A stretch of 63,832 nt of DNA, the filler included, from Octopus bimaculoides (lineage: Eukaryota), in the NCBI RefSeq assembly GCF_001194135.2. It is 9 parts of 6 records of this genome, joined end to end, with 100 filler letters (N's around TTAATTAATTAA, not from the genome) between each part and the next. Parts side by side here need not be neighbours in the genome. Positions count along the whole stretch, not along the records: positions 25,435 to 50,820 come from NC_068981.1; 8 more parts are not named here. One strand, 5' to 3'. Shown piece after piece: positions 26,350-50,820 of the stretch (position 1 is the stretch's first letter; every line of letters starts with the position of its first letter). A program made the position numbers and the translations under genes. The notes beneath the pieces are model-generated. The model ran no database searches, was not told where the DNA came from, and saw only the letters and a list, made by a program, of their open reading frames with translations.

Positions 26350-26652
26350 ACATTCAATCACCATTCGAATGTGATCATTGCCAGTGCCGCCAGACTGGCT
26401 CCTGCGCCGGTGGCATGTAAAAAGCACCATTCAAGCATGGCCAATGCCAGTACCGCCTGATTGGTCCTCGTGCTGGTGGCATATAAAAAGCATGCACTAC
26501 ACTCTTGGAGTGGTTGGCATTAGGAAGGGCATCCAGCTGTAGAAACATTGCCAGATCGGATTGGAGTCTGGTGCAGCTTTCTGGCTTGCCAGCCCTTAGT
26601 CAAACTGTCCAACCCATGCCAGCATGGAAAGTGGACGTTAAATGACGACGAT
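26350..26652 (+). mobile_element. SINE/LINE-tail family C, (GAT)n tail; other copies 33891-34110, 39214-39367, 45925-46105, 46688-46830, 59265-59378 (+) and 43513-43690 (-)
   Basis: Shared GGAAGGGCATCCAGCTGTAGAAA..TCCAACCCATGCCAGCATGGAAA..GGACGTTAAA(TGA)n. Confidence 0.88.
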
Positions 26653-26659
26653 GGCAAAG

Positions 26660-27105
26660 GTAGCAAGCTGGCAGAAACGTTAGCACACTGGGTGGTGAGC
26701 TGGCAGAAACGTTAGCACGCCGGGCAAAATGCTTAATGGTATTTCGTCTGCCTTTACGTTCTGAGTTCAAATTCCGCCGAGGTTGACTTTACCTTTCATC
26801 CTTTCAGGGTCGACAAATTAAGTACCAGTTACGCACTGGGGTCGATGTAATCGACTTAATCCTTTGTCTGTCCTTGTTTGTCCCCTCTATGTTTAGCCCC
26901 TTGTGGGCAATAAAGAAATAGGAAACGTTAGCACGCTGGGCGAAACGCTTAGCAGTATTTTGAGTTCAAAGTCCGCCGAGGTCGACTTTGCCTTTCATCC
27001 TTTCGGGGTCGATAAATTAAGTACCAGTTGCATTCTGGGGTCGATCTAATCAACTGGCTCCCTTCTCAAAAATTTCAGGCCTTGTGCCTAGAGTAGAAGA
27101 GAATA
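26660..27105 (+). mobile_element. Family-B SINE dimer with duplicated head
   Basis: Two B boxes (GAGTTCAAATTCC, GAGTTCAAAGTCC); tail b then tail a. Confidence 0.9.
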
Positions 27106-32045: not shown

Positions 32046-32752
32046 TATATATAAAATATATAGTTTTAGGGAAAATAACCAAGTTTCAAGAACTCATCGA
32101 TGAAAATCCACTATCACATATAGAAAAATTAATAATTAAAAGCACAATAAATGAGTATAATATAAAGTAAAGTAAATATCATAAGATAAATATAATAAAA
32201 AGATTACACGTGTTTCATAACTAATTTTCAAATANNNNNNNNNNNNNNNNNNNNNNNNNNNNNNNNNNNNNNNNNNNNNNNNNNNNNNNNNNNNNNNNNN
32301 NNNNNNNNNNNNNNNNNNNNNNNNNNNNNNNNNNNNNNNNNNNNNNNNNNNNNNNNNNNNNNNNNNNNNNNNNNNNNNNNNNNNNNNNNNNNNNNNNNNN
32401 NNNNNNNNNNNTATTTCATATTAATTCATTTGGTACTTATTGTTGGTTGAGAGATATATATATCTAATTATTGTTCTACTTACGATCTGACGAGTAGCTA
32501 TATTTTTGTATAGAATTTATTTTCGATAATTTTAATTGATTTTAATCGATTTAAATTTCTTTTCTATTTGAAAATTAGTTATGAAACACGTGTAATCTTT
32601 TTATTATATTTATCTTATGATATTTACTTTACTTTATATTATATTCATTTATTGTGCTTTTAATTATTAATTTTTCTATATGTGATAGTGGATTTTCATC
32701 GATGAGTTCTTGAAACTTGGTTATTTTCCCTAAAACTATATATTTTATATAT
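32046..32752. repeat. AT-rich fold-back element, about 190-bp inverted arms (32046-32234 / 32565-32752)
   Basis: Arms near-identical (one substitution and one 1-bp indel seen); left arm runs into a gap. Confidence 0.8.
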
Positions 32753-33136: not shown

Positions 33137-34521
33137 NNNNNNNNNNNNNNNNNNNNNNNNNNNNNNNNNNNNNNNNNNNNNNNNNNNNNNNNNNNNNNNN
33201 NNNNNNNNNNNNNNNNNNNNNNNNNNNNNNNNNNNNNNNNNNNNNNNNNNNNNNNNNNNNNNNNNNNNNNNNNNNNNNNNNNNNNNNNNNNNNNNNNNNN
33301 NNNNNNNNNNNNNNNNNNNNNNNNNNNNNNNNNNNNNNNNNNNNNNNNNNNNNNNNNNNNNNNNNNNNNNNNNNNNNNNNNNNNNNNNNNNNNNNNNNNN
33401 NNNNNNNNNNNNNNNNNNNNNNNNNNNNNNNNNNNNNNNNNNNNNNNNNNNNNNNNNNNNNNNNNNNNNNNNNNNNNNNNNNNNNNNNNNNNNNNNNNNN
33501 NNNNNNNNNNNNNNNNNNNNNNNNNNNNNNNNNNNNNNNNNNNNNNNNNNNNNNNNNNNNNNNNNNNNNNNNNNNNNNNNNNNNNNNNNNNNNNNNNNNN
33601 NNNNNNNNNNNNNNNNNNNNNNNNNNNNNNNNNNNNNNNNNNNNNNNNNNNNNNNNNNNNNNNNNNNNNNNNNNNNNNNNNNNNNNNNNNNNNNNNNNNN
33701 NNNNNNNNNNNNNNNNNNNNNNNNNNNNNNNNNNNNNNNNNNNNNNNNNNNNNNNNNNNNNNNNNNNNNNNNNNNNNNNNNNNNNNNNNNNNNNNNNNNN
33801 NNNNNNNNNNNNNNNNNNNNNNNNNNNNNNNNNNNNNNNNNNNNNNNNNNNNNNNNNNNNNNNNNNNNNNNNNNNNNNNNNNNNNNNNNNTGCCAGTATC
33901 GCCTGACTGGCCTTCGTGCAGGTGACACGTAAAAGCACCTACTACACTCTCTGAGTGGTTGGCGTTAGGAAGGGCATCCAGCTGTAGAAACTCTGCCAAA
34001 ATTAGATTGGAGCCTGGTGTTGCCATCCGGTTTCACCAGTCCTCAGTCAAATCGTCCAACCCATGCTAGCATGGAAAGCGGACGTTAAACGATGATGATG
34101 ATGATGATGATATACAGAGAAAGAGGGGGGAGGGAGAGAGCTTTGTATCTGCCTGTTGTGAGGTAATCTATTGACAGATGTATATAATAGGCCTGCATAT
34201 GAATGCATACATATGTGGGCGTGTGTCCTGTATAGTCTGTTGACAGATGTTTATAGTACAGTATTTGTGTGTGGATGTGTGGCAAGAGTCTAATCTGTTA
34301 ACCTGCCACCCTATCTTTTACCCTCCCTTTTTTCTCCCTCATCAATTCTCTTTACCACCCTCTAACTTTCCCCCAATAAAAACTTGTAACACACGTTTTC
34401 TTTTCTTTCTGTCACATCTTTTTCTTTCTTTATCTTCTCTTCCTCCACCTTTGTGAGGGTGTGTTGAGCTGCTGCACATTCTAGACTTTCTCCCATTCCA
34501 TTTTCATCCCCCACCAATCTA

Positions 34522-34600: not shown

Positions 34601-35730
34601 AAATAATATGTGAGTATATGCATATATATATATGTACATGTATGTACATACCTACATCTACATGTATATATATATAGATGCATATCTGGGTACNNNNNNN
34701 NNNNNNNNNNNNNNNNNNNNNNNNNNNNNNNNNNNNNNNNNNNNNNNNNNNNNNNNNNNNNNNNNNNNNNNNNNNNNNNNNNNNNNNNNNNNNNNNNNNN
34801 NNNNNNNNNNNNNNNNNNNNNNNNNNNNNNNNNNNNNNNNNNNNNNNNNNNNNNNNNNNNNNNNNNNNNNNNNNNNNNNNNNNNNNNNNNNNNNNNNNNN
34901 NNNNNNNNNNNNNNNNNNNNNNNNNNNNNNNNNNNNNNNNNNNNNNNNNNNNNNNNNNNNNNNNNNNNNNNNNNNNNNNNNNNNNNNNNNNNNNNNNNNN
35001 NNNNNNNNNNNNNNNNNNNNNNNNNNNNNNNNNNNNNNNNNNNNNNNNNNNNNNNNNNNNNNNNNNNNNNNNNNNNNNNNNNNNNNNNNNNNNNNNNNNN
35101 NNNNNNNNNNNNNNNNNNNNNNNNNNNNNNNNNNNNNNNNNNNNNNNNNNNNNNNNNNNNNNNNNNNNNNNNNNNNNNNNNNNNNNNNNNNNNNNNNNNN
35201 NNNNNNNNNNNNNNNNNNNNNNNNNNNNNNNNNNNNNNNNNNNNNNNNNNNNNNNNNNNNNNNNNNNNNNNNNNNNNNNNNNNNNNNNNNNNNNNNNNNN
35301 NNNNNNNNNNNNNNNNNNNNNNNNNNNNNNNNNNNNNNNNNNNNNNNNNNNNNNNNNNNNNNNNNNNNNNNNNNNNNNNNNNNNNNNNNNNNNNNNNNNN
35401 NNNNNNNNNNNNNNNNNNNNNNNNNNNNNNNNNNNNNNNNNNNNNNNNNNNNNNNNNNNNNNNNNNNNNNNNNNNNNNNNNNNNNNNNNNNNNNNNNNNN
35501 NNNNNNNNNNNNTATATAAAGTCCTTGGTAAAGTGTTATATACTTGAAAAAATAGAATTGGCCTTTCTGATAATTTTTCCACTTTAATAATTAGATGTTT
35601 CTAAATTGTATAAAGATAGATGCACACAAATGCAATTTATTTAATTTTTGCCTGATGGCTTATTGAAGCAATTGGTGAAACTAAGTTTCCATTCAAAACG
35701 AATTTCATTCCACCCATTATTGATGTGCAG

Positions 35731-35809: not shown

Positions 35810-36699
35810 GTAAGCATTCATACATACAGACATCAGACATACACACAGACACGCATGGCAGTCTATTAAATTCACTCATTAGACATTGATACAACCCGGA
35901 CTATCATAGAAGACATCAATGATGCCCTGCAATGAGACTTGAACCTGTTGCAAAGTGAGCGACTTGACCACACAGTAACACCTGTACCTATATGTGTGTG
36001 TTTATATATATATATGTCCCTTTGGGTAATATTTCCCCATGACTGGACATGTTTTTACAGTTGATTGGAAGTGAAGGATTGCACTTTGTGATGGTGAAAT
36101 TCATTTACAACTACAGCATGATGTCGAGGCAAGGAGACAAACACACACATACATACATATATGCACATATGACAGGCTTCTTCTTTCTACCATCTACCAA
36201 ATCCACTCACAAAGCTTTAGTCAGCTCTGAGCTATAGAACGCATTTGAACAATGTGCCATACAATGGGAATGAATCCAAAACCATGTTGTTGGGAAACAA
36301 ATTTCATAACTACACAACTATGCTTGTGCATATTGTTAAACACTAATGCTTCAAAAATTACATTCTAATGGGAAGAATATGATAAAATTCCAAATTTAGA
36401 TGAACTCTAAGGATTTTTTGCAAATAAACAACGTTATTGGCCATTGATGCAATTGATTTTAGTCGTACATTTTAGACTTCACATATAGCTTTTTCCATAT
36501 CTTGATACATAAATACAAGTGATTGAAATGGGGGTCCCTCCAAAGGGTCTCTGGAGTAACATTACTTGACAGGGTTTGGAGCTTGGAGATTAGGGAATCT
36601 CTCTAGGTGAAGCTACTACTCTGCATTGAGAAATGCTCTTGACCCGCTCCCCCTCCCACCATCTTGACTCAGTGGAACATCTAGGTTTTGACAACTCAA

Positions 36700-36870
36700 A
36701 GGAGAGTACCAGAGTTTGGCTGGTATTCATCTTCAGCCAAGTAAACCAGAGCAATGTGAAATGAAGTGACTTGCTCAACAGCACAGTTAACTACCAAATC
36801 CAGAAATTGAACTCATGACTTTATGATCATGAACTCAACACCTTAACCACTAGGCTATATGCCTTAGGCA
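36700..36870 (-). mobile_element. SINE family E (tRNA head + TTGAGCAAG core); other copies 38465-38620 and 50385-50595 (+)
   Basis: Head GGC.CATGGCT.AGT.GTTAG, B box GAGTTCA.TTC, TTGAGCAAGACACTTT. Confidence 0.75.
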
Positions 36871-36924
36871 TTGTAGGGTTAAACAAATCTTGATTTAGCT
36901 ACTTCCCTACAATATATATATATA

Positions 36925-37880
36925 TTCTTTTCTACTCTAAGCACAAAGCCTGAAATTTTTGGGGAGGTGGTGGTGGTGGTGGTGGGGGCAGTCGATTAGA
37001 TTGAGCCCAGTACAGAACTGGTACTTAATTTATTGACCTTGAAAAGATGGAAGGCAAAGTCGACCTCGGCAGAATTTGAACTCAGAATCTAAAGACAGAC
37101 GAAATACCACTAAGCATTTCGCCTGGTGTGCTGTTTCTACCAGCTCGCCACCTTCCTACAATATATATATATATATATATATATATTTATTTCTTTTATT
37201 GCTCACAGGGGGCTAAACACAGAGGGGACAAACAAGGACAGACAAAAGGATTAAGTCGATTACATTGACCCCAGTGCATAACTGGTATTTATTTAATCGA
37301 TCCCGAAAGGATGAAAGCAAAGCAACCTCAGCAGAATTTGAACTCAGAATGTAATGGCAGACGAAATACCGCTAAGCATTTCGCCCGGTGTGCTAACAAT
37401 TCTGCCAACTCACTGCCTTCCTACAATATATATATTCTTTTCTAATCTAGGCACAAGGCCTGAAATTTTTGAGGAGGGGGCAATCGATTAGATTGACCCC
37501 AGAATGCAACTACTACTTAATTTATTGACCCCGAAAGGATGAAAGGCAAAGTCAACTTCAGCGGAATTTGAACTCAGAATGAAAGACAGAGACGAAATAC
37601 TGCTAAGCATTTCGCCTAGCATGCTAATGTTTCTGCCAGCTCGCTGCCTTCTACACTATATTTATTCTTTTCTACTGTAAGCACAAGGCCCAAAATTTTG
37701 GGGGAGGGGGCCAGTCGATTAGATCAACGCCAGTACGCAACTGGTGCTTAATTTATCGACCCCAAAAGGATGAAAGGCAAAGTCGACCTCAATGGAATTT
37801 GAACACAGAATGTAAAGACAGATGAAATACCACTAAGCATTTCGCCTGGCATGCTAACAATTCTGCCAGCTAGTCACCTT
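36925..37880 (-). mobile_element. Four head-to-tail family-B SINEs separated by copies of one target sequence
   Basis: Four GAATTTGAAC B boxes; CCTACAATATATAT at 36906, 37155, 37420, 37881 and a degenerate copy at about 37649. Confidence 0.92.
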
Positions 37881-39774
37881 CCTACAATATATATATTGAA
37901 GTACTGATGATCATGTTGAGAGACCACTCAACAATAACAATAAGAATTCAACAACTACAACAATAAAAATGTCCAAGTGTTTACTAGTTTTCATTTTAGA
38001 GTTAATCTTGCTTGACCTTGTCCACTCAGTGGTCAGTACTTATTAAGAGACAGTTAAATCACTAGCCATTGTACATTCCAACCATTTTACTTTATCAGAC
38101 TTGAAAACGTTTTTTTTTTTGTTTTTTTTTTAAAAGTACAAGTTTTTTTGTTGTCTTTTTTTTTTTCATGGACAACTCCTCCTACTTGCTGGCTATGGCT
38201 ATTTATTCCCTCTGAAACAAAGATCTGCTGCAGTTGTGTAAATGTCAATGAAAACTAAAGAAGTAAAATAAGAAAAAGGTACTTTTTGTTTTATTATTTT
38301 GCAATGAAACAATAAAATCCAAGGAAATTAGTGATGGTCTGTATTAACAAGCATTAGTAATCACATAAAGTTTGCAATTCTTATCTTTTCTGTATCTTGG
38401 GAGGGTCATTATGCCAATAATAAACACACACACTGGTTATATTTCACTTTCTTATTTGACAATGTGGAGGTATGCATCTTAGTGGTTAGGGTGTCAGACT
38501 CATGATTGTAAAATTGTGGTTTAAATTCCTGGACTGGACAATATGTTGTAGCTTTGAGCAAAACACTTCATTTTATGTTGCTCCAGGTTCACTTAGCTGG
38601 CAAAAATGGGCAATCTTGTGACAGACAGTCATCCCATCCAGTGGGGAAATATATGTGCCATGGAAAAAAAGTCATATGAGTCTATATGACTTGGGGAGTT
38701 ATAAAGATTCACATCAAGAATCTTGGAAAACCAAATACAAAAACGAACCAGCACTGATAGCAAGCTATCACATCACATGCAACAAGGATTGGATCTTGTG
38801 ATGGTGGGACTCATAAAGCTGGAGGTTAACATGGTTTCCATGAAACATAACTTACCTGAAATTACAACACTACCTCCTGAATGGGATGCTGGTCTGTTAC
38901 AGGTCTTTCCAGTCATTGATGAAATTTGTTTACAATTGAGTGGCTTGTAGTGACATGAAATGAAGTGTTTTGTTCAAGAACACAATGCAAGGTGCCAAGT
39001 GATGGTATTAGATCAGATGGTGGATTATGTCTACCACCTAAGTATTGAGATAGTTAGGCAGAAAGAGAAGAAAAAATGAAACAGCCTTAATATATTTTTA
39101 TTGTAAGTTAGTTAAGATAGTAAGTTAGTAAGTTAGTAAGATAGTAAGATAGTAAGTTAGTAAGATAGTAAGTTAGTTAAGGTTGTAAGTTATTGTAGAT
39201 AGTTATTGTAGTTAGTTGGCGTTAGGAAGGGTATCCAGCTGTAGAAACTCTACCAAATCAGATTGGAGCCTGGTGTAGCCATCTGGTTCACCAGTCCTCA
39301 GTCAAATCGTCCAACCCATGCTAGCATGGAAAGCGGACATTAAACGATGATGATGATGATGATGATGAGTTAAATAAATAAAGAAAATGTGCAGGGGACA
39401 AGTGAAGGAGGAGATTGGGAGGGTTGGCTTGAGGAGGGAGGATGCTCCAAACTGAGCAAGATGGCGAAATTGTGTGAGAGCGGTTGCTGTAGGAGTGAGG
39501 TAGACCTGGCCAGCCCCGTTAAGGGGGGGGGGGGGAACAGACCCCCCCCCCCCGGATTTAAAATATTGGAATTCATTCATCATACATCATGAATATTTCA
39601 TCAACATTATCATCATCAAGATTAATATCATCATTGTTGTTGGCATTATCACTTCATGATGATGATCAATACTGTCATCACCTTATCATCGTTATCATCA
39701 TCATCATCATCATCAATGTTATCATCATCTTCATGTCATTATCATTATGCCTACATCATCATTATTACCACCAC

Positions 39775-39990
39775 CAAGGCGGCGAGCTGGCAGAACTGTT
39801 AGCACACCAGGCAAAATGCTCAGTTGTATTTCGCCCGTAGCTATGTTCTGAGTTCAAATTCTGCCAAGGTCGACTTTGCCTTTCATCCTTTTGGGGGTCA
39901 ATGAATTAAGTACCAGTCAAGTACTTGGGTCAATGTGATTGACTCACGCCCCCCCCCCCAATATTTCAGGCCTTGTGCCTACAATAGAAA
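39775..39990 (+). mobile_element. SINE family B; others at 41580-41945, 58460-58710 (-) and 59385-59590 (+)
   Basis: GGCGGCGAGCTGGCAGAA head, GAGTTCAAATTC, CAGGCCTTGTGCC tail. Confidence 0.88.
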
Positions 39991-40089
39991 CGATTATTAC
40001 TTCCACTATTGTTGTCATCAATGGTATTGCCATTGTCATCATCATCATCATCACCAGCACCAGCAGCAGCACCACCACCACCTCAGTTG

Positions 40090-40350
40090 TTGTCCTAACA
40101 TCTAAGTCTGTATGCTGGTATGGGTTGGGTTGGATTGGATTGGTTTGATATACAACACATTGTCAGTTGTCACAACACTTGTCATCTCATCCACGAGGTC
40201 CAATGTTCTGAGATCTGACATCAACACATCTTCCCATGACTTCTTTGGTTTTCCTCTCCTATGGATACCTTCTTCCTCTCTCTCTCCCCTCCCTGGCAAT
40301 CAGCACATGGCCTTCACCCACCCACTGCACCTCCCATCACTCATTCTAAT
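40090..40350 (-). mobile_element. RTE-clade LINE 3' remnant
   Basis: RMSDGRCSGWVK..RRGKPKKSWEDVLMSDLRTLDLVDEMT fits the RTE RT C-terminal RGRPKKTW motif; followed by CCAACCCATACCAGCAT. Confidence 0.7.
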
Positions 40351-40564: not shown

Positions 40565-42389
40565 GGAGGAGGAGGAGGAGGAAAGGAAGAGGAGGAAAGG
40601 AGGAGGAGGATGACATCAGTGGAAGCAGCAATGATGATGATGAAAATGATGGGGGAGTGAAAATAGGGGGGAAGGATCAGTGTTAAAATATTTTNNNNNN
40701 NNNNGGAGGAAAGGAGGAGGAGGAGGAAAGGAGGAAAGGAGGAAAGGAGGAAAGGAGGAAAGGAGGAGGAGGATGACATCAGTGGAAGCAGCAATGATGA
40801 TGATGAAAATGATGGGGGAGTGAAAATAGGGGGGAAGGATCAGTGTTAAAATATTTTTATTTCAAGGAAGAAGGTGATGCTGATGATTGTCATCCATGAC
40901 TTTCAGTCTTTCTGGACATCTTACAAAGCAAAACACTAAATATTATATTCATACTTTTCAGCTCTCTCTCTCTCATGAAGGTTTATTGCATTAGCATTGA
41001 TCAGCACAAGGTTACAGATCTTTAGTGGAGGGGAAGGAGGAGAAGGAAACTGGTTGTGTGAGGAAGTAGGAGGGGTGCACAGTCAATTGAATCAAACAGT
41101 ACTTGACATAAACAATAACACTGGTATAATGGGTGAAGACCTGGTTGTTAAAAGTAATCACTGTAGTTTATAAATTCATAAACTTTCAGCCATATGTGAA
41201 ATGTCTAAACATGGCCTATATTGGAGAAAAAAAAACAAAAACAAAACAAAAAACAAGAAAACACATATGCCATCCCCCAACCAATCTTTAGTTAATAATC
41301 ACCTCTCTTCACACTTTCAAAGAAGGTCATTCTCTTCACTCTCTGTCACAACACAAGATTAAATGGACAATATCTTATCAATAATGGAAGTGTTGTCATT
41401 CAAAAGGCCAAAAATATAAACAGTCATAAATTGTGGAAGTAATCCTTGTGGTGGTGGTGGTGTGGTGGCAGTTGATCTTTGATGGAACCAAAGAAACAAG
41501 GTTTGTATTTGTATTGGCTTTTTCAAATTGCTGATATTATCTGTCAGTCACAACTGCAACTTTTAAAAGAAGTGTGTCACTGATTTTCAGAGTTGTGGTA
41601 GGATGTGAACTTTGTATGTACAGAATCAGAAGAGCTACTGCAAGGCATCCTGTCCAATGCTCAATCTATTTTGCCAACCCACCAACTTGGATTGGCACTT
41701 TGCCTTTTCATTCTTTCAGGGATAAAAAAAAAAACAAAAACAAAGTTGACCTTAGTTGTATTTGAACTCAGTATGCACAAAGTCAAGGCAACCTCTCCAA
41801 AGCTCTAACAATTCCACCAATGCACCAGCTTGGACTGGTACGTTTTTTTCTATTGACCTCCTCCAACCAAAAGATATGAAATGCAAAGTTGACCTTGGCA
41901 GGATTTGAACTCAGAGCTCATAGAGTCAGAACAAATACCTGCCAATTTATCACTTAAAATTTCCTGACAAAATGCAAGCAACACTTGGGACTCTATTGAC
42001 AGTTGTCATCATGCATAACTTCTAATATTAACTACAACAGTGTTTCTCAAGGTGTAGATGGGTGAAGATTGAAATGAAGGCAGAGAAATTACCATGTTTA
42101 GTAAAATTAAGATAGCTTTAAACTGTTTGTCCAACACCATGGTGAAGAAAGAAGAATTATAAGTGGGGAAGCAAACTTCATTTTGTCTTCTCATTAGTAA
42201 AGAGCAGAAAGTTAAAAAGTTTCACTAATATGCTTTTGGGGGCTGGGGCTAGGGGTTAGTATTTGTCAGTTTGAGAACTCCTGAACTATGAACCAATGAG
42301 AGAACCTCTATATAGTAGCTCAACTTACTGCTTATAAAAAACACCAAAAATGTCTAGCACATGTCATACAGGCCTAGTTGTGGCCAGAT

Positions 42390-48582: not shown

Positions 48583-49173
48583 NNNNNNNNNNNNNNNNNN
48601 NNNNNNNNNNNNNNNNNNNNNNNNNNNNNNNNNNNNNNNNNNNNNNNNNNNNNNNNNNNNNNNNNNNNNNNNNNNNNNNNNNNNNNNNNNNNNNNNNNNN
48701 NNNNNNNNNNNNNNNNNNNNNNNNNNNNNNNNNNNNNNNNNNNNNNNNNNNNNNNNNNNNNNNNNNNNNNNNNNNNNNNNNNNNNNNNNNNNNNNNNNNN
48801 NNNNNNNNNNNNNNNNNNNNNNNNNNNNNNNNNNNNNNNNNNNNNNNNNNNNNNNNNNNNNNNNNNNNNNNNNNNNNNNNNNNNNNNNNNNNNNNNNNNN
48901 NNNNNNNNNNNNNNNNNNNNNNNNNNNNNNNNNNNNNNNNNNNNNNNNNNNNNNNNNNNNNNNNNNNNNNNNNNNNNNNNNNNNNNNNNNNNNNNNNNNN
49001 NNNNNNNNNNNNNNNNNNNNNNNNNNNNNNNNNNNNNNNNNNNNNNNNNNNNNNNNNNNNNNNNNNNNNNNNNNNNNNNNNNNNNNNNNNNNNNNNNNNN
49101 NNNNNNNNNNNNNNNNNNNNNNNNNNNNNNNNNNNNNNNNNNNNNNNNNNNNAGTAAATAAATAAATAAATAA

Positions 49174-49775: not shown

Positions 49776-50820
49776 TAAAATTATATATATATATATATAT
49801 ATACACACACATATTTATATACAATAAATACATTTGGATAACAAATCTACATTTGGACCTATTTGTCAAATATCAGATATTGCAATTGTTCTTTGTTAGA
49901 ATTGGAAGCATTTCTTGCATCTTCCAAGTAATTTCAGAAAGAGACTTGAGATCTCATCTTCTAACCTGTTTCCATGGTTATTTGATTGATGTCATTATTA
50001 CATCAATAAAATAAGATTGACATATATATTTTATTTTACTTCATTTTTTAAAATTATTTTCTTGCCACAGTTTCAGTCTATTATTCATATTAAAATCATG
50101 GAATATGTTACAATACAAGTATGGAAAAATGGAGGCTGAAACAATGATATATATCTTTTTCTCTTATATTTCTTTCAGTCATTAGACTGTGGCCATGCTG
50201 AGGCACTGAGTTGAAGACTTTTTAGTCCAATGAATCGACCCTGTATTTATCTTTTTTAAGCAGGTACTTATTCTATCAGTCTCTTTTGCTGACCCACTAA
50301 GTTATGGGGACATAAACACACCAACACTGGTTGTGAAGCAGTAGTGGGGGACAAACACATACACATGTGTATGCGCATACGTGAAGGCACATGGCTCAGT
50401 AGTTAGTGCGTCGGGCTCACAATCATGAAGTAGTGAGTTCAGTTCCCAGATCAGGCTGTGTGATGTGTTCTTGAGCAAGACACTTTATTTCATATTGCTT
50501 CAGTTCAATCAGCTGTAGAAATGAGTTGCAGCATCACTGGTGCCAAGCTGTACTGGTCACTGCCTTTCCCAAGCTGTACTGGTCACTGCCTTTCCCTTTA
50601 CTTGTTTCAGTCATTTGACTGCGTCCCTGCTGGAGCACCACCTTTAGTCGAACAAATCAACCCCAGGACTTATTCTTTGTAAGCTTGGTACATATTCTAT
50701 CGGTCTCTTTTGCCAAATCACAAAGTGATGGGGACGTAAACATACCAACATTGTCAAGTAATAATGGGGTGGGGGCAAACACAAACACAAATAACAAACA
50801 CACACACACATACATATATA

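What the first reader, a model, noticed from the sequence alone, without database searches (positions are those of the whole stretch)
36906..37896. SINE stack: four insertions at one target with the target repeated at all five junctions
Seen: flank-T-SINE-T-SINE-T-SINE-T-SINE-T-flank, with T = CCTACAATATATAT(AT)n (one copy degenerate). The copies are co-oriented and mutually diverged, and the second has the alternative tail b, so simple tandem amplification cannot explain all units. Established: target-primed reverse transcription creates TSDs. Inference: the same nick site was reused, each insertion regenerating the target, i.e. a self-renewing hotspot at an (AT)n edge.
Basis: partly seen in the sequence, partly recalled or inferred. 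Interest (0 to 1): 0.7.

Follow-up and report, generated by a model that had tools for sequence, protein, structure and literature searches.

The report
Four SINEs stacked at one target
Four copies of a short retrotransposon lie head-to-tail at one spot with the same 16-base target copy at all five junctions; at least three arrived separately, so this is an unusually deep example of the already described re-use of a regenerated target site.

Summary
On the + strand the layout is T(36906-25) u1 T(37155-86) u2 T(37420-35) u3 T'(37651-65, degenerate) u4 T(37881-96). The exact 14-mer CCTACAATATATAT occurs only at these junctions in the piece. The units are 215-233 bp SINE-like elements with their sense on the minus strand. 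Three more copies lie elsewhere in the piece.

Recent tandem amplification is excluded:
- u2 is tail-b type throughout and pairs with a tail-b copy 10 kb away.
- u3 groups with another distant copy at 86-97% bootstrap.
- The three tail-a units never form a clade.
- CpG decay directions among stack units agree at 20 of 39 sites, which is random.

The best reading is at least three, possibly four, separate target-primed insertions into (AT)5TGTAGG. Each one duplicated the target and so preserved it.

I cannot exclude an early duplication giving u1 and u4, or serial insertion in a single episode. Nineteen other (AT)n tracts in the piece carry no copy, so an (AT)n edge alone does not explain the hotspot.

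The principle is already published as target-site triplication, TE double insertion and TSD-(SINE-TSD)n arrays. This is a clean, deep new example of it, of modest interest.

The parts
36906..36925 (-). T1: target copy CCTACA(AT)7. On the element's sense strand it reads (AT)7TGTAGG. It lies 3' of u1 and abuts the unique flank.
36926..37154 (-). u1: full-length tail-a SINE copy of 229 nt, with an internal (GGT)6 expansion at 36963-36983.
37155..37186 (-). T2: target copy CCTACA(AT)13.
37187..37419 (-). u2: full-length tail-b SINE copy of 233 nt. It carries the b-type diagnostic bases in the core (alignment columns 62, 144, 147, 160) and the b tail.
37420..37435 (-). T3: target copy CCTACA(AT)5.
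37436..37650 (-). u3: full-length tail-a copy of 215 nt. Its closest relative is c5 at 26.9-27.1 kb.
37651..37665 (-). T4: degenerate target copy CTACACTATATTTAT, with one base lost and two substitutions.
37666..37880 (-). u4: full-length tail-a copy of 215 nt.
37881..37896 (-). T5: target copy CCTACA(AT)5. It lies 5' of u4 on the sense strand and abuts the unique flank.
26693..26920 (+). c6: tail-b copy elsewhere in the piece. It is nested in the head of c5 and flanked by a 19-20 bp TSD, GAAACGTTAGCAC(A/G)CTGGG, at 26673-26692 and 26922-26940.
26657..27102 (+). c5: tail-a copy split by c6. The head fragment is 26657-26692 and the rest is 26941-27102. It has an 18-nt internal deletion. Its 3' end abuts ATATATTCTAAT-type AT-rich repeats.
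39776..39992 (+). c7: solitary tail-a copy with a ~15-bp TSD. The two copies are ATTATTACCACCACC at 39761-39775 and ATTATTACTTCCACT at 39993-40007 (12 of 15 identical). It lies inside an ATC/ATT-rich simple-repeat tract.

Best explanation
The stack is a multiplied target site made by repeated target-primed reverse transcription (TPRT) at one place.

Inferred mechanism, read on the element's sense strand (window minus strand):
- The empty site was ...CAGTACTTCA | (AT)5TGTAGG | GAAGTAGCTAAATC....
- A partner LINE's endonuclease nicked the bottom strand at the left edge of the (AT) run.
- The freed 3' end (...CCTACAATATATAT-3') primed reverse transcription at the SINE RNA's A-rich 3' end.
- The top strand was cut about 16 nt downstream, just after TGTAGG.
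- Fill-in left one copy of T on each side of the insert.
- Both T copies keep both cut sites, so later insertions could use either copy and reproduce the same TSD and the same orientation.

Shown:
- The five T copies and the four co-oriented full-length units.
- At least three different source lineages among the units: b type (u2), a type near c5 (u3), and a type (u1, u4).
- Independent CpG decay in all units.
- TSDs of 15-20 bp for other copies of the family.

Inferred:
- The positions of the nicks and priming on the (AT) run.
- That u1 and u4 are also separate events.
- Why this site, rather than other (AT)n tracts, was hit repeatedly.
For: - T occurs only at the five junctions.
- T is not part of the element. 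Copies c5, c6 and c7 elsewhere lack (AT)nTGTAGG at their 3' ends and lack TGTAGG before their AAGG heads. The outermost T5 stands next to unique flank with no element upstream of it.
- Other copies have ordinary TSDs of 15 bp (c7) and 19-20 bp (c6). A 16-bp T is therefore a normal TSD for this family.
- u2 shares the ~65-nt tail b and four non-CpG core positions with c6, giving a 100% bootstrap on all columns.
- u3 groups with c5 at 86-97% bootstrap, and the stack's tail-a units never form a clade.
- Core divergence within the stack (16-20%) is no lower than to copies elsewhere (11-23%).
- Among stack units, CpG sites that decayed in both members of a pair went the same way in 20 of 39 cases, which is the random expectation. 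The units were therefore already separate while their CpGs were intact.
- T conservation, with 4 of 5 copies intact, is compatible with neutral decay at 4-8% per site (P = 0.04-0.29).
- Published precedent for the mechanism: PMC1687206 (target site triplication by consecutive retroposition) and 10.1101/158386 (an insertion preserves its target while generating a new one).
Against: - Only seven copies were available to define lineages. Part of the u3-c5 signal sits at CpG-derived positions, which are prone to parallel change.
- The four units have the same CpG retention (28, 28, 33 and 35%), so there is no sign of insertions spread over time.
- u1 and u4 share one private non-CpG base (alignment column 221), so they could be an early duplicate pair.
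- TSD length in the family varies from 15 to 20 bp, so exact re-use of the second cut site three or four times needs an explanation that I cannot supply.
- Nineteen other (AT)>=5 tracts in the piece are unoccupied.
- No empty-site allele, orthologue or partner LINE could be examined. Searches found no further copies in the collections at hand.
Confidence: 0.55

Rival explanations
1. Mixed origin. Two or three independent insertions into T, plus one early unequal exchange or replication slippage between T copies that duplicated a tail-a unit and gave u1 and u4. u2 and u3 then inserted into the T between them.
For: - u1 and u4 share one private non-CpG base (alignment column 221) and the AAGGTG head variant.
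- All four units have equal CpG age.
- Unequal recombination between TSDs is the explanation proposed for the bivalve TSD1-(SINE-TSD1)n arrays (PMC11481361).
Against: - The u1+u4 clade has only about 20% bootstrap support.
- Their core divergence (16%) equals that to unlinked copies.
- Their CpG decays agree at 3 of 6 sites, which is random. Any duplication must therefore have come almost immediately after insertion.
- This model still needs exact re-use of T by u2 and u3.
Confidence: 0.2
2. One episode. The LINE ribonucleoprotein, or a burst of them, re-cut the regenerated target and inserted several different SINE RNAs in quick succession. The four units are then the same age but come from different source genes.
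For: - The four units, including the tail-b one, have equal CpG retention (28-35%), whereas c5 and c6 elsewhere retain 61-67%.
- The units belong to different lineages.
- The possibility was raised for L1-driven target site triplications in PMC1687206.
Against: - There is no direct evidence for it.
- CpG retention based on 16-18 sites is a coarse clock.
- c7, a solitary copy, has the same retention (28%), so the shared age may simply reflect a family-wide burst.
Confidence: 0.12
3. A single insertion amplified by unequal crossing-over between its TSDs. The units then diverged over a long period, and ectopic gene conversion turned one unit into tail-b type.
For: - The periodic T-unit-T structure.
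- TSD-mediated array growth has been proposed for Alu and for bivalve SINEs (cited in PMC11481361).
Against: - u2 is b type over its whole length, including a ~65-nt non-homologous tail that a conversion tract would have to span.
- u3 groups with c5 and not with u1 or u4.
- There is no shared CpG decay.
- The bivalve arrays consist of highly similar units, and these units are not similar in that way.
Confidence: 0.05
4. Assembly artefact. The stack is a chimeric path through repeats in a draft assembly.
For: The piece is a draft with N gaps, several of them next to AT-rich repeats (32235-32411, 33137-33890, 34694-35512, 48583-49152).
Against: - No gap lies within 1.3 kb of the stack.
- The units differ by 16-20%, so each junction is anchored by unit-specific sequence.
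- T is 16-32 bp, shorter than ordinary reads.
- A chimera would require several other loci that also carry T next to this SINE, and T is absent elsewhere in the piece.
Confidence: 0.03

Closest known systems
Target site triplication by consecutive retroposition (snoRNA retroposons with Alu/B2/ID elements, PMC1687206; Alu target site triplication, Lee et al. 2015, as cited in PMC11481361)
   Same: - Different non-autonomous retroposons sit in tandem with the identical TSD at every junction.
- This is read as two retroposition events at one site rather than template switching.
   Different: - Here there are five target copies and four elements, not three and two.
- The elements have no poly(A) tail.
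- The target is (AT)5TGTAGG, not the L1 TT|AAAA site.
- The partner LINE is unknown.
TE tandem dimers by double insertion (McGurk and Barbash, bioRxiv 10.1101/158386; R1 array with 33-nt rDNA duplications)
   Same: - The principle is the same: an insertion that makes a TSD preserves its target and creates a second one.
- Elements with site preference therefore stack with the TSD in the junction.
- Distinct units, there distinct 5' truncations and here distinct subfamilies, argue for separate events.
   Different: - Those cases are mostly dimers, later expanded by unequal exchange into homogeneous arrays.
- Here there is no sign of expansion by exchange.
- Their evidence comes from a Drosophila population survey, whereas this is a single fixed-looking locus.
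TSD1-(SINE-TSD1)n arrays of tRNA-related SINEs in the bivalve Scapharca broughtonii (PMC11481361)
   Same: - A SINE array with the same architecture, where the same TSD separates every unit.
- Arrays that mix families are also recorded there (137 structures).
   Different: - The bivalve arrays are described as highly similar units truncated at the same 3' position, and are attributed to unequal recombination between TSDs.
- Here the units are full length, 16-20% diverged and from different lineages.
Microsatellite-targeting non-LTR retrotransposons (for example Dong in (TAA)n, and R1-clade elements in (AC)n, (TC)n and (ACAY)n; own knowledge and the abstract of PMC4640811). Dong-R4 LINEs are reported as abundant and recently active in Octopus vulgaris (PMC13282606).
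   Same: - The insertion is at a simple repeat.
- Two other tail-a loci of this family also lie in or at simple repeats (c5, c7).
   Different: - The family is not strictly site-specific. c6 sits inside another copy's head, c7 in an ATT/ATC tract, and 19 (AT)n tracts are empty.
- The endonuclease type of the partner LINE is unknown.

Membership tests
SINE (non-autonomous non-LTR retrotransposon) | Short, non-coding, dispersed copies with defined ends | tested here: met
   There are seven copies of 215-235 nt at three loci on both strands. They share a head starting AAGG(Y)(R)GC(G)AGCTGG and end in ...TAGAAAAGA (tail a) or ...AAAGAAATAA (tail b). No terminal inverted repeats were seen when reading the ends.
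SINE (non-autonomous non-LTR retrotransposon) | [quoted passage not shown] | tested here: inconclusive
   A box-B-like GTTCAAATTC and a loose box-A-like TAGCACGCCGGG lie about 50 nt apart. ARAGORN finds no tRNA at default settings, and Rfam gives no tRNA match even at E<=10.
SINE (non-autonomous non-LTR retrotransposon) | Target site duplications of variable sequence around individual copies | tested here: met
   c7 has a 15-bp TSD with 12 of 15 identical. c6 has a 19-20-bp TSD with one mismatch at a CpG. The stack has T of 16 bp or more. c5 has no recognisable TSD.
SINE (non-autonomous non-LTR retrotransposon) | 3' tail shared with a partner LINE | not testable with these tools
   No LINE carrying tail a or tail b is present in the piece. 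No eukaryotic genome collection was available.
Target-site multiplication by repeated insertion (double insertion / target site triplication) | The same TSD at every junction and at both outer ends, with units co-oriented | tested here: met
   There are five T copies, four exact over the 14-mer and one with three changes. All units are sense-on-minus.
Target-site multiplication by repeated insertion (double insertion / target site triplication) | Units of demonstrably independent origin | tested here: met
   This is met for u2 (b type) and u3 (groups with c5 at 86-97%) against u1 and u4. It is unresolved between u1 and u4.
Target-site multiplication by repeated insertion (double insertion / target site triplication) | Empty site or intermediate alleles in other haplotypes or species | not testable with these tools
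   No other individual or species can be reached. Exact-pattern scans of the metagenome, prokaryote-genome and viral collections found no copy of the family.
SINE tandem array by unequal recombination between TSDs | Units are each other's closest relatives, with shared private mutations | tested here: not met
   The tail-a units form no clade. Within-stack divergence is no lower than between loci. CpG decay directions agree at 20 of 39 sites, which is random.
Sequence-specific (microsatellite-targeting) retrotransposon | All or most copies inserted in the same target sequence | tested here: not met
   The three loci have three different targets, and 19 other (AT)>=5 tracts are unoccupied. In 6 of 7 copies the base pair after the tail is AT, which is a weak hint of AT-start targets only.

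The most novel reading that the evidence does not exclude
Resident copies attract new ones. The seven copies in 25 kb sit at only three loci (4+2+1). c6 landed within the first 36 nt of c5, and every stack insertion landed within 16-32 nt of a resident copy's end. An (AT)n edge alone does not predict occupancy. The family's retrotransposition complex might therefore be guided to existing copies. Possible guides are Pol III factors bound at the head, as for Ty3 or the Dictyostelium TRE elements, or pairing of the SINE RNA with its genomic homologue. That would make stacks a regular product of the family rather than an accident.
Probability: 0.12. Interest if true: 0.6.

Novelty: new member of a known kind. 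Interest (0 to 1): 0.3.

Why it matters
Exact re-use of a retroposon target by separate events has three consequences:
- It bears on SINE insertions as homoplasy-free phylogenetic markers.
- It shows how dispersed elements can seed tandem arrays and satellites.
- It constrains the nicking rules of the still unidentified partner LINE: both cuts were reproduced to the base, although the family's TSD length varies from 15 to 20 bp.

A four-deep stack that mixes subfamilies is a convenient natural experiment. Intermediate alleles in relatives would give the order of events and show which T copy is re-used. The principle is already established, so a single locus adds an example and not a new concept.

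Tried and rejected
- **T as part of the element's consensus end or head.** Rejected. c5, c6 and c7 lack it, and T5 abuts unique flank.
- **The flank beyond T1 (GAAGTAGCTAAATC...) as a decayed fifth head.** Local alignment to the heads is no better than shuffles (p = 0.09-0.72).
- **A hairpin at the site.** ATTGTAGGG (36871-79) and CCCTACAAT (36905-13) are inverted repeats. The DNA fold gives -8 kcal/mol and z = -2.15, with 8 of 200 shuffles folding as well. This is too weak to build on.
- **More copies from public collections.** One 21-mer of the core was scanned in the metagenome, prokaryote-genome and viral contigs. It returned two metagenome contigs sharing only 45-51 nt of the core, and one chance 21-mer. 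No family members were found.
- **Sequence strings in the literature.** No useful hit.
- **tRNA origin.** Rfam and ARAGORN were negative.
- **Age ladder from CpG retention.** None was seen.
- **T conservation as evidence of youth.** Not significant.
- **Identifying the organism from coding sequence.** There is no credible ORF in the piece. From memory the repeat content looks cephalopod-like, but this was not tested.

Full report
**What is there**

On the + strand:

| Feature | Coordinates | Note |
|---|---|---|
| T1 | 36906-36925 | CCTACA(AT)7 |
| u1 | 36926-37154 | tail a |
| T2 | 37155-37186 | CCTACA(AT)13 |
| u2 | 37187-37419 | tail b |
| T3 | 37420-37435 | CCTACA(AT)5 |
| u3 | 37436-37650 | tail a |
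| T4 | 37651-37665 | CTACACTATATTTAT, degenerate |
| u4 | 37666-37880 | tail a |
| T5 | 37881-37896 | CCTACA(AT)5 |

- The exact 14-mer CCTACAATATATAT occurs four times in the window, only at these junctions.
- Tandem Repeats Finder sees a 231-nt period at 81% matches.
- The piece is a draft with N gaps, several beside AT-rich repeats. None lies near the stack.

**What the units are**

- BLAST of one unit against the piece finds three further copies.
  - c7 is 39776-39992 (+).
  - c6 is 26693-26920 (+).
  - c5 is 26657-27102 (+), split by c6.
- All copies share a head (AAGGYRGCGAGCTGGCAGAA...) and a 170-nt head plus core.
- They end in one of two unrelated tails. Tail a ends ...GGCCTTGTGCCTAGAGTAGAAAAGA. 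Tail b ends ...TTAGCCCCCTGTGAGCAATAAAAGAAATAA.
- The sense strand of the stack is the window minus strand.
- Other copies have ordinary target site duplications. c7 has 15 bp (12 of 15 identical). c6 has 19-20 bp, and its insertion split the head of c5.
- This is SINE behaviour.
- A tRNA origin is not confirmed. Only a box-B-like motif and a loose box-A-like motif are present, and ARAGORN and Rfam are negative.
- A 45-51-nt piece of the core recurs in two metagenome contigs. This suggests a conserved SINE core domain, which I could not name with the tools at hand.

**T is target, not element**

- On the sense strand each junction reads ...AGAAAAGA | (AT)nTGTAGG | AAGG....
- c5, c6 and c7 have neither (AT)nTGTAGG after their tails nor TGTAGG before their heads.
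- The outermost T5 stands between unique flank and u4 with no element upstream of it.
- T was therefore in the genome before the elements. At 16 bp it is a normal TSD for this family.

**Duplication or separate insertions**

Four tests were possible with the seven copies.

1. Core divergence within the stack is 16-20%. This is no lower than to copies elsewhere (11-23%). The nearest relative of u3 is c5 (11%), and the nearest relative of u2 is c6 (15%).
2. Neighbour-joining with 500 bootstraps:
   - u3+c5 gets 86% on the core and 97% on tail-a copies at full length.
   - u2+c6 gets 100% on all columns.
   - u3+u4 gets 1% and u1+u4 about 20%.
   - The stack's tail-a units never form a clade.
3. 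u2 carries b-specific non-CpG bases in the core (alignment columns 62, 144, 147, 160) as well as the b tail. It is a b element throughout, not a converted a unit.
4. At 16 ancestral CpG sites, pairs of stack units that both decayed went the same way (TG or CA) in 20 of 39 cases. That is the random expectation. The units were therefore already separate while their CpGs were intact, and they have not been homogenised since.

- At least three source lineages used the same target with the same boundaries.
- This holds in any model. Recombination between alleles would also need independent insertions at the same site.

**What stays open**

- u1 and u4 are unresolved. They share one private non-CpG base.
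- CpG retention is 28, 28, 33 and 35% in u4, u3, u2 and u1. It is 61-67% in c5 and c6, and 28% in c7.
- The four stack units are therefore equally old, and no age ladder is visible.
- This fits spaced insertions within one burst, an immediate duplication of one unit, or serial insertion in one episode. The last possibility was raised for L1 in PMC1687206.
- T conservation (4 of 5 intact) is within neutral expectation (P = 0.04-0.29).

**Mechanism**

- The mechanism is inferred from the known course of target-primed reverse transcription.
- The bottom-strand nick falls at the left edge of the (AT) run. The exposed ...ATATAT-3' end primes on the SINE RNA.
- In 6 of 7 copies the tail is followed by AT. 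This means either that the RNA ends in AU or that targets starting with AT are preferred.
- The top-strand nick falls 16 nt downstream, after TGTAGG. For L1 the two nicks lie a nearly constant 15-16 bp apart (PMC2836564). The TSDs here are 15-20 bp.
- Fill-in duplicates T, and both copies keep both cut sites.
- Because T is asymmetric, exact re-use also forces the same orientation, as observed.

**Why this site**

- An (AT)n edge is not enough. Nineteen other (AT)>=5 tracts in the piece carry no copy, including one with a similar edge (TCTACC(AT)18 at 34518).
- Four hits on one of about 20 equivalent tracts would have a probability near 1e-4.
- The family's seven copies sit at three loci (4+2+1). 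One is nested in the first 36 nt of another.
- Some feature of this site, or of resident copies, must raise the local rate.
- I tested two candidates. A 9-bp inverted repeat pairing T1 with a sequence 26 nt away gave z = -2.15. Similarity of the flank to the SINE head was not significant. Neither is convincing.

**Comparison with what is known**

- The principle is published. 'Target site triplication' describes consecutive retroposition of different elements at one site (PMC1687206).
[quoted passage not shown] They show TE dimers with the TSD in the junction (10.1101/158386).
- Bivalve SINEs form TSD1-(SINE-TSD1)n arrays, attributed there to unequal recombination between TSDs (PMC11481361).
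- This stack differs in three ways. It has five target copies. It mixes lineages. It shows no sign of recombinational expansion.
- It is not a member of the microsatellite-specific retrotransposon class, because other copies use other targets.

**Verdict**

- The feature is real and correctly described.
- It is a new and deep example of a known phenomenon. I score interest at 0.3.
- The most novel reading still open is targeting guided by resident copies. I give it a probability of about 0.12.

Noticed in passing
window 26657-27102: A second cluster of the same family. The tail-b copy c6 (26693-26920) is inserted in sense orientation into the first 36 nt of the tail-a copy c5. It is flanked by a 19-20 bp duplication of the c5 head (GAAACGTTAGCACRCTGGG). 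c5 also has an 18-nt internal deletion and no recognisable TSD of its own.
   Followed up: partly
window 26600-26656 (+) and about 40060-40130 (-): Another repeat family (...CCAACCCATGCCAGCATGGAAAGTGGACGTTAAATGACGACGA...) ends in a GAC/GAT-type simple repeat. c5 abuts the end of one copy, and c7 lies inside the trinucleotide-repeat tract that follows the other. So all three tail-a loci are at or in simple repeats.
   Followed up: no
window about 36500-36865 (-); weaker copies at 38480-38599 and 50384-50499 (+): A different SINE-like element lies 40 nt from the stack, in the same orientation. Its head reads GGCATATAGCCTAGTGGTTAAGG...GAGTTCAATTTCTGG. From memory, a ...TTGAGCAAGTCACTT... stretch resembles the Deu core domain. 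The other two copies are about 71% identical.
   Followed up: partly
window 36871-36879 and 36905-36913: A 9-bp perfect inverted repeat, ATTGTAGGG / CCCTACAAT, pairs the non-(AT) part of T1 with a sequence 25 nt away in the unique flank. The DNA fold gives -8 kcal/mol and z = -2.15. It may be chance.
   Followed up: partly
window 36963-36983: u1 carries a (GGT)6 expansion, (ACC)n on the sense strand, in place of the C-rich run that the other tail-a copies have there.
   Followed up: no
L002 6536-6586 and L001 1785-1865 (metagenome contigs Ga0066187_1002493 and Ga0209339_1041834): Between 45 and 51 nt of the SINE core (GGTCGACTTTGCCTTTCATCCTTTCGGGGTCGATAAA...) recur at about 90% identity, with no similarity outside that stretch. 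This suggests a conserved SINE core domain shared with other eukaryotes. I did not identify the domain.
   Followed up: partly
window 32235-32411, 33137-33890, 34694-35512, 40695-40704, 48583-49152: These are assembly gaps (runs of N). Two directly follow long (AT)n tracts, and others lie in AT-rich repeats. This is typical of a short-read draft, and whatever lies at those microsatellite edges cannot be seen.
   Followed up: no
all seven SINE copies: More than half of all differences between copies fall at CpG sites. The older copies retain only about 30% of ancestral CpGs, while non-CpG divergence from the consensus is 5-11%. This points to germline methylation of these elements.
   Followed up: partly
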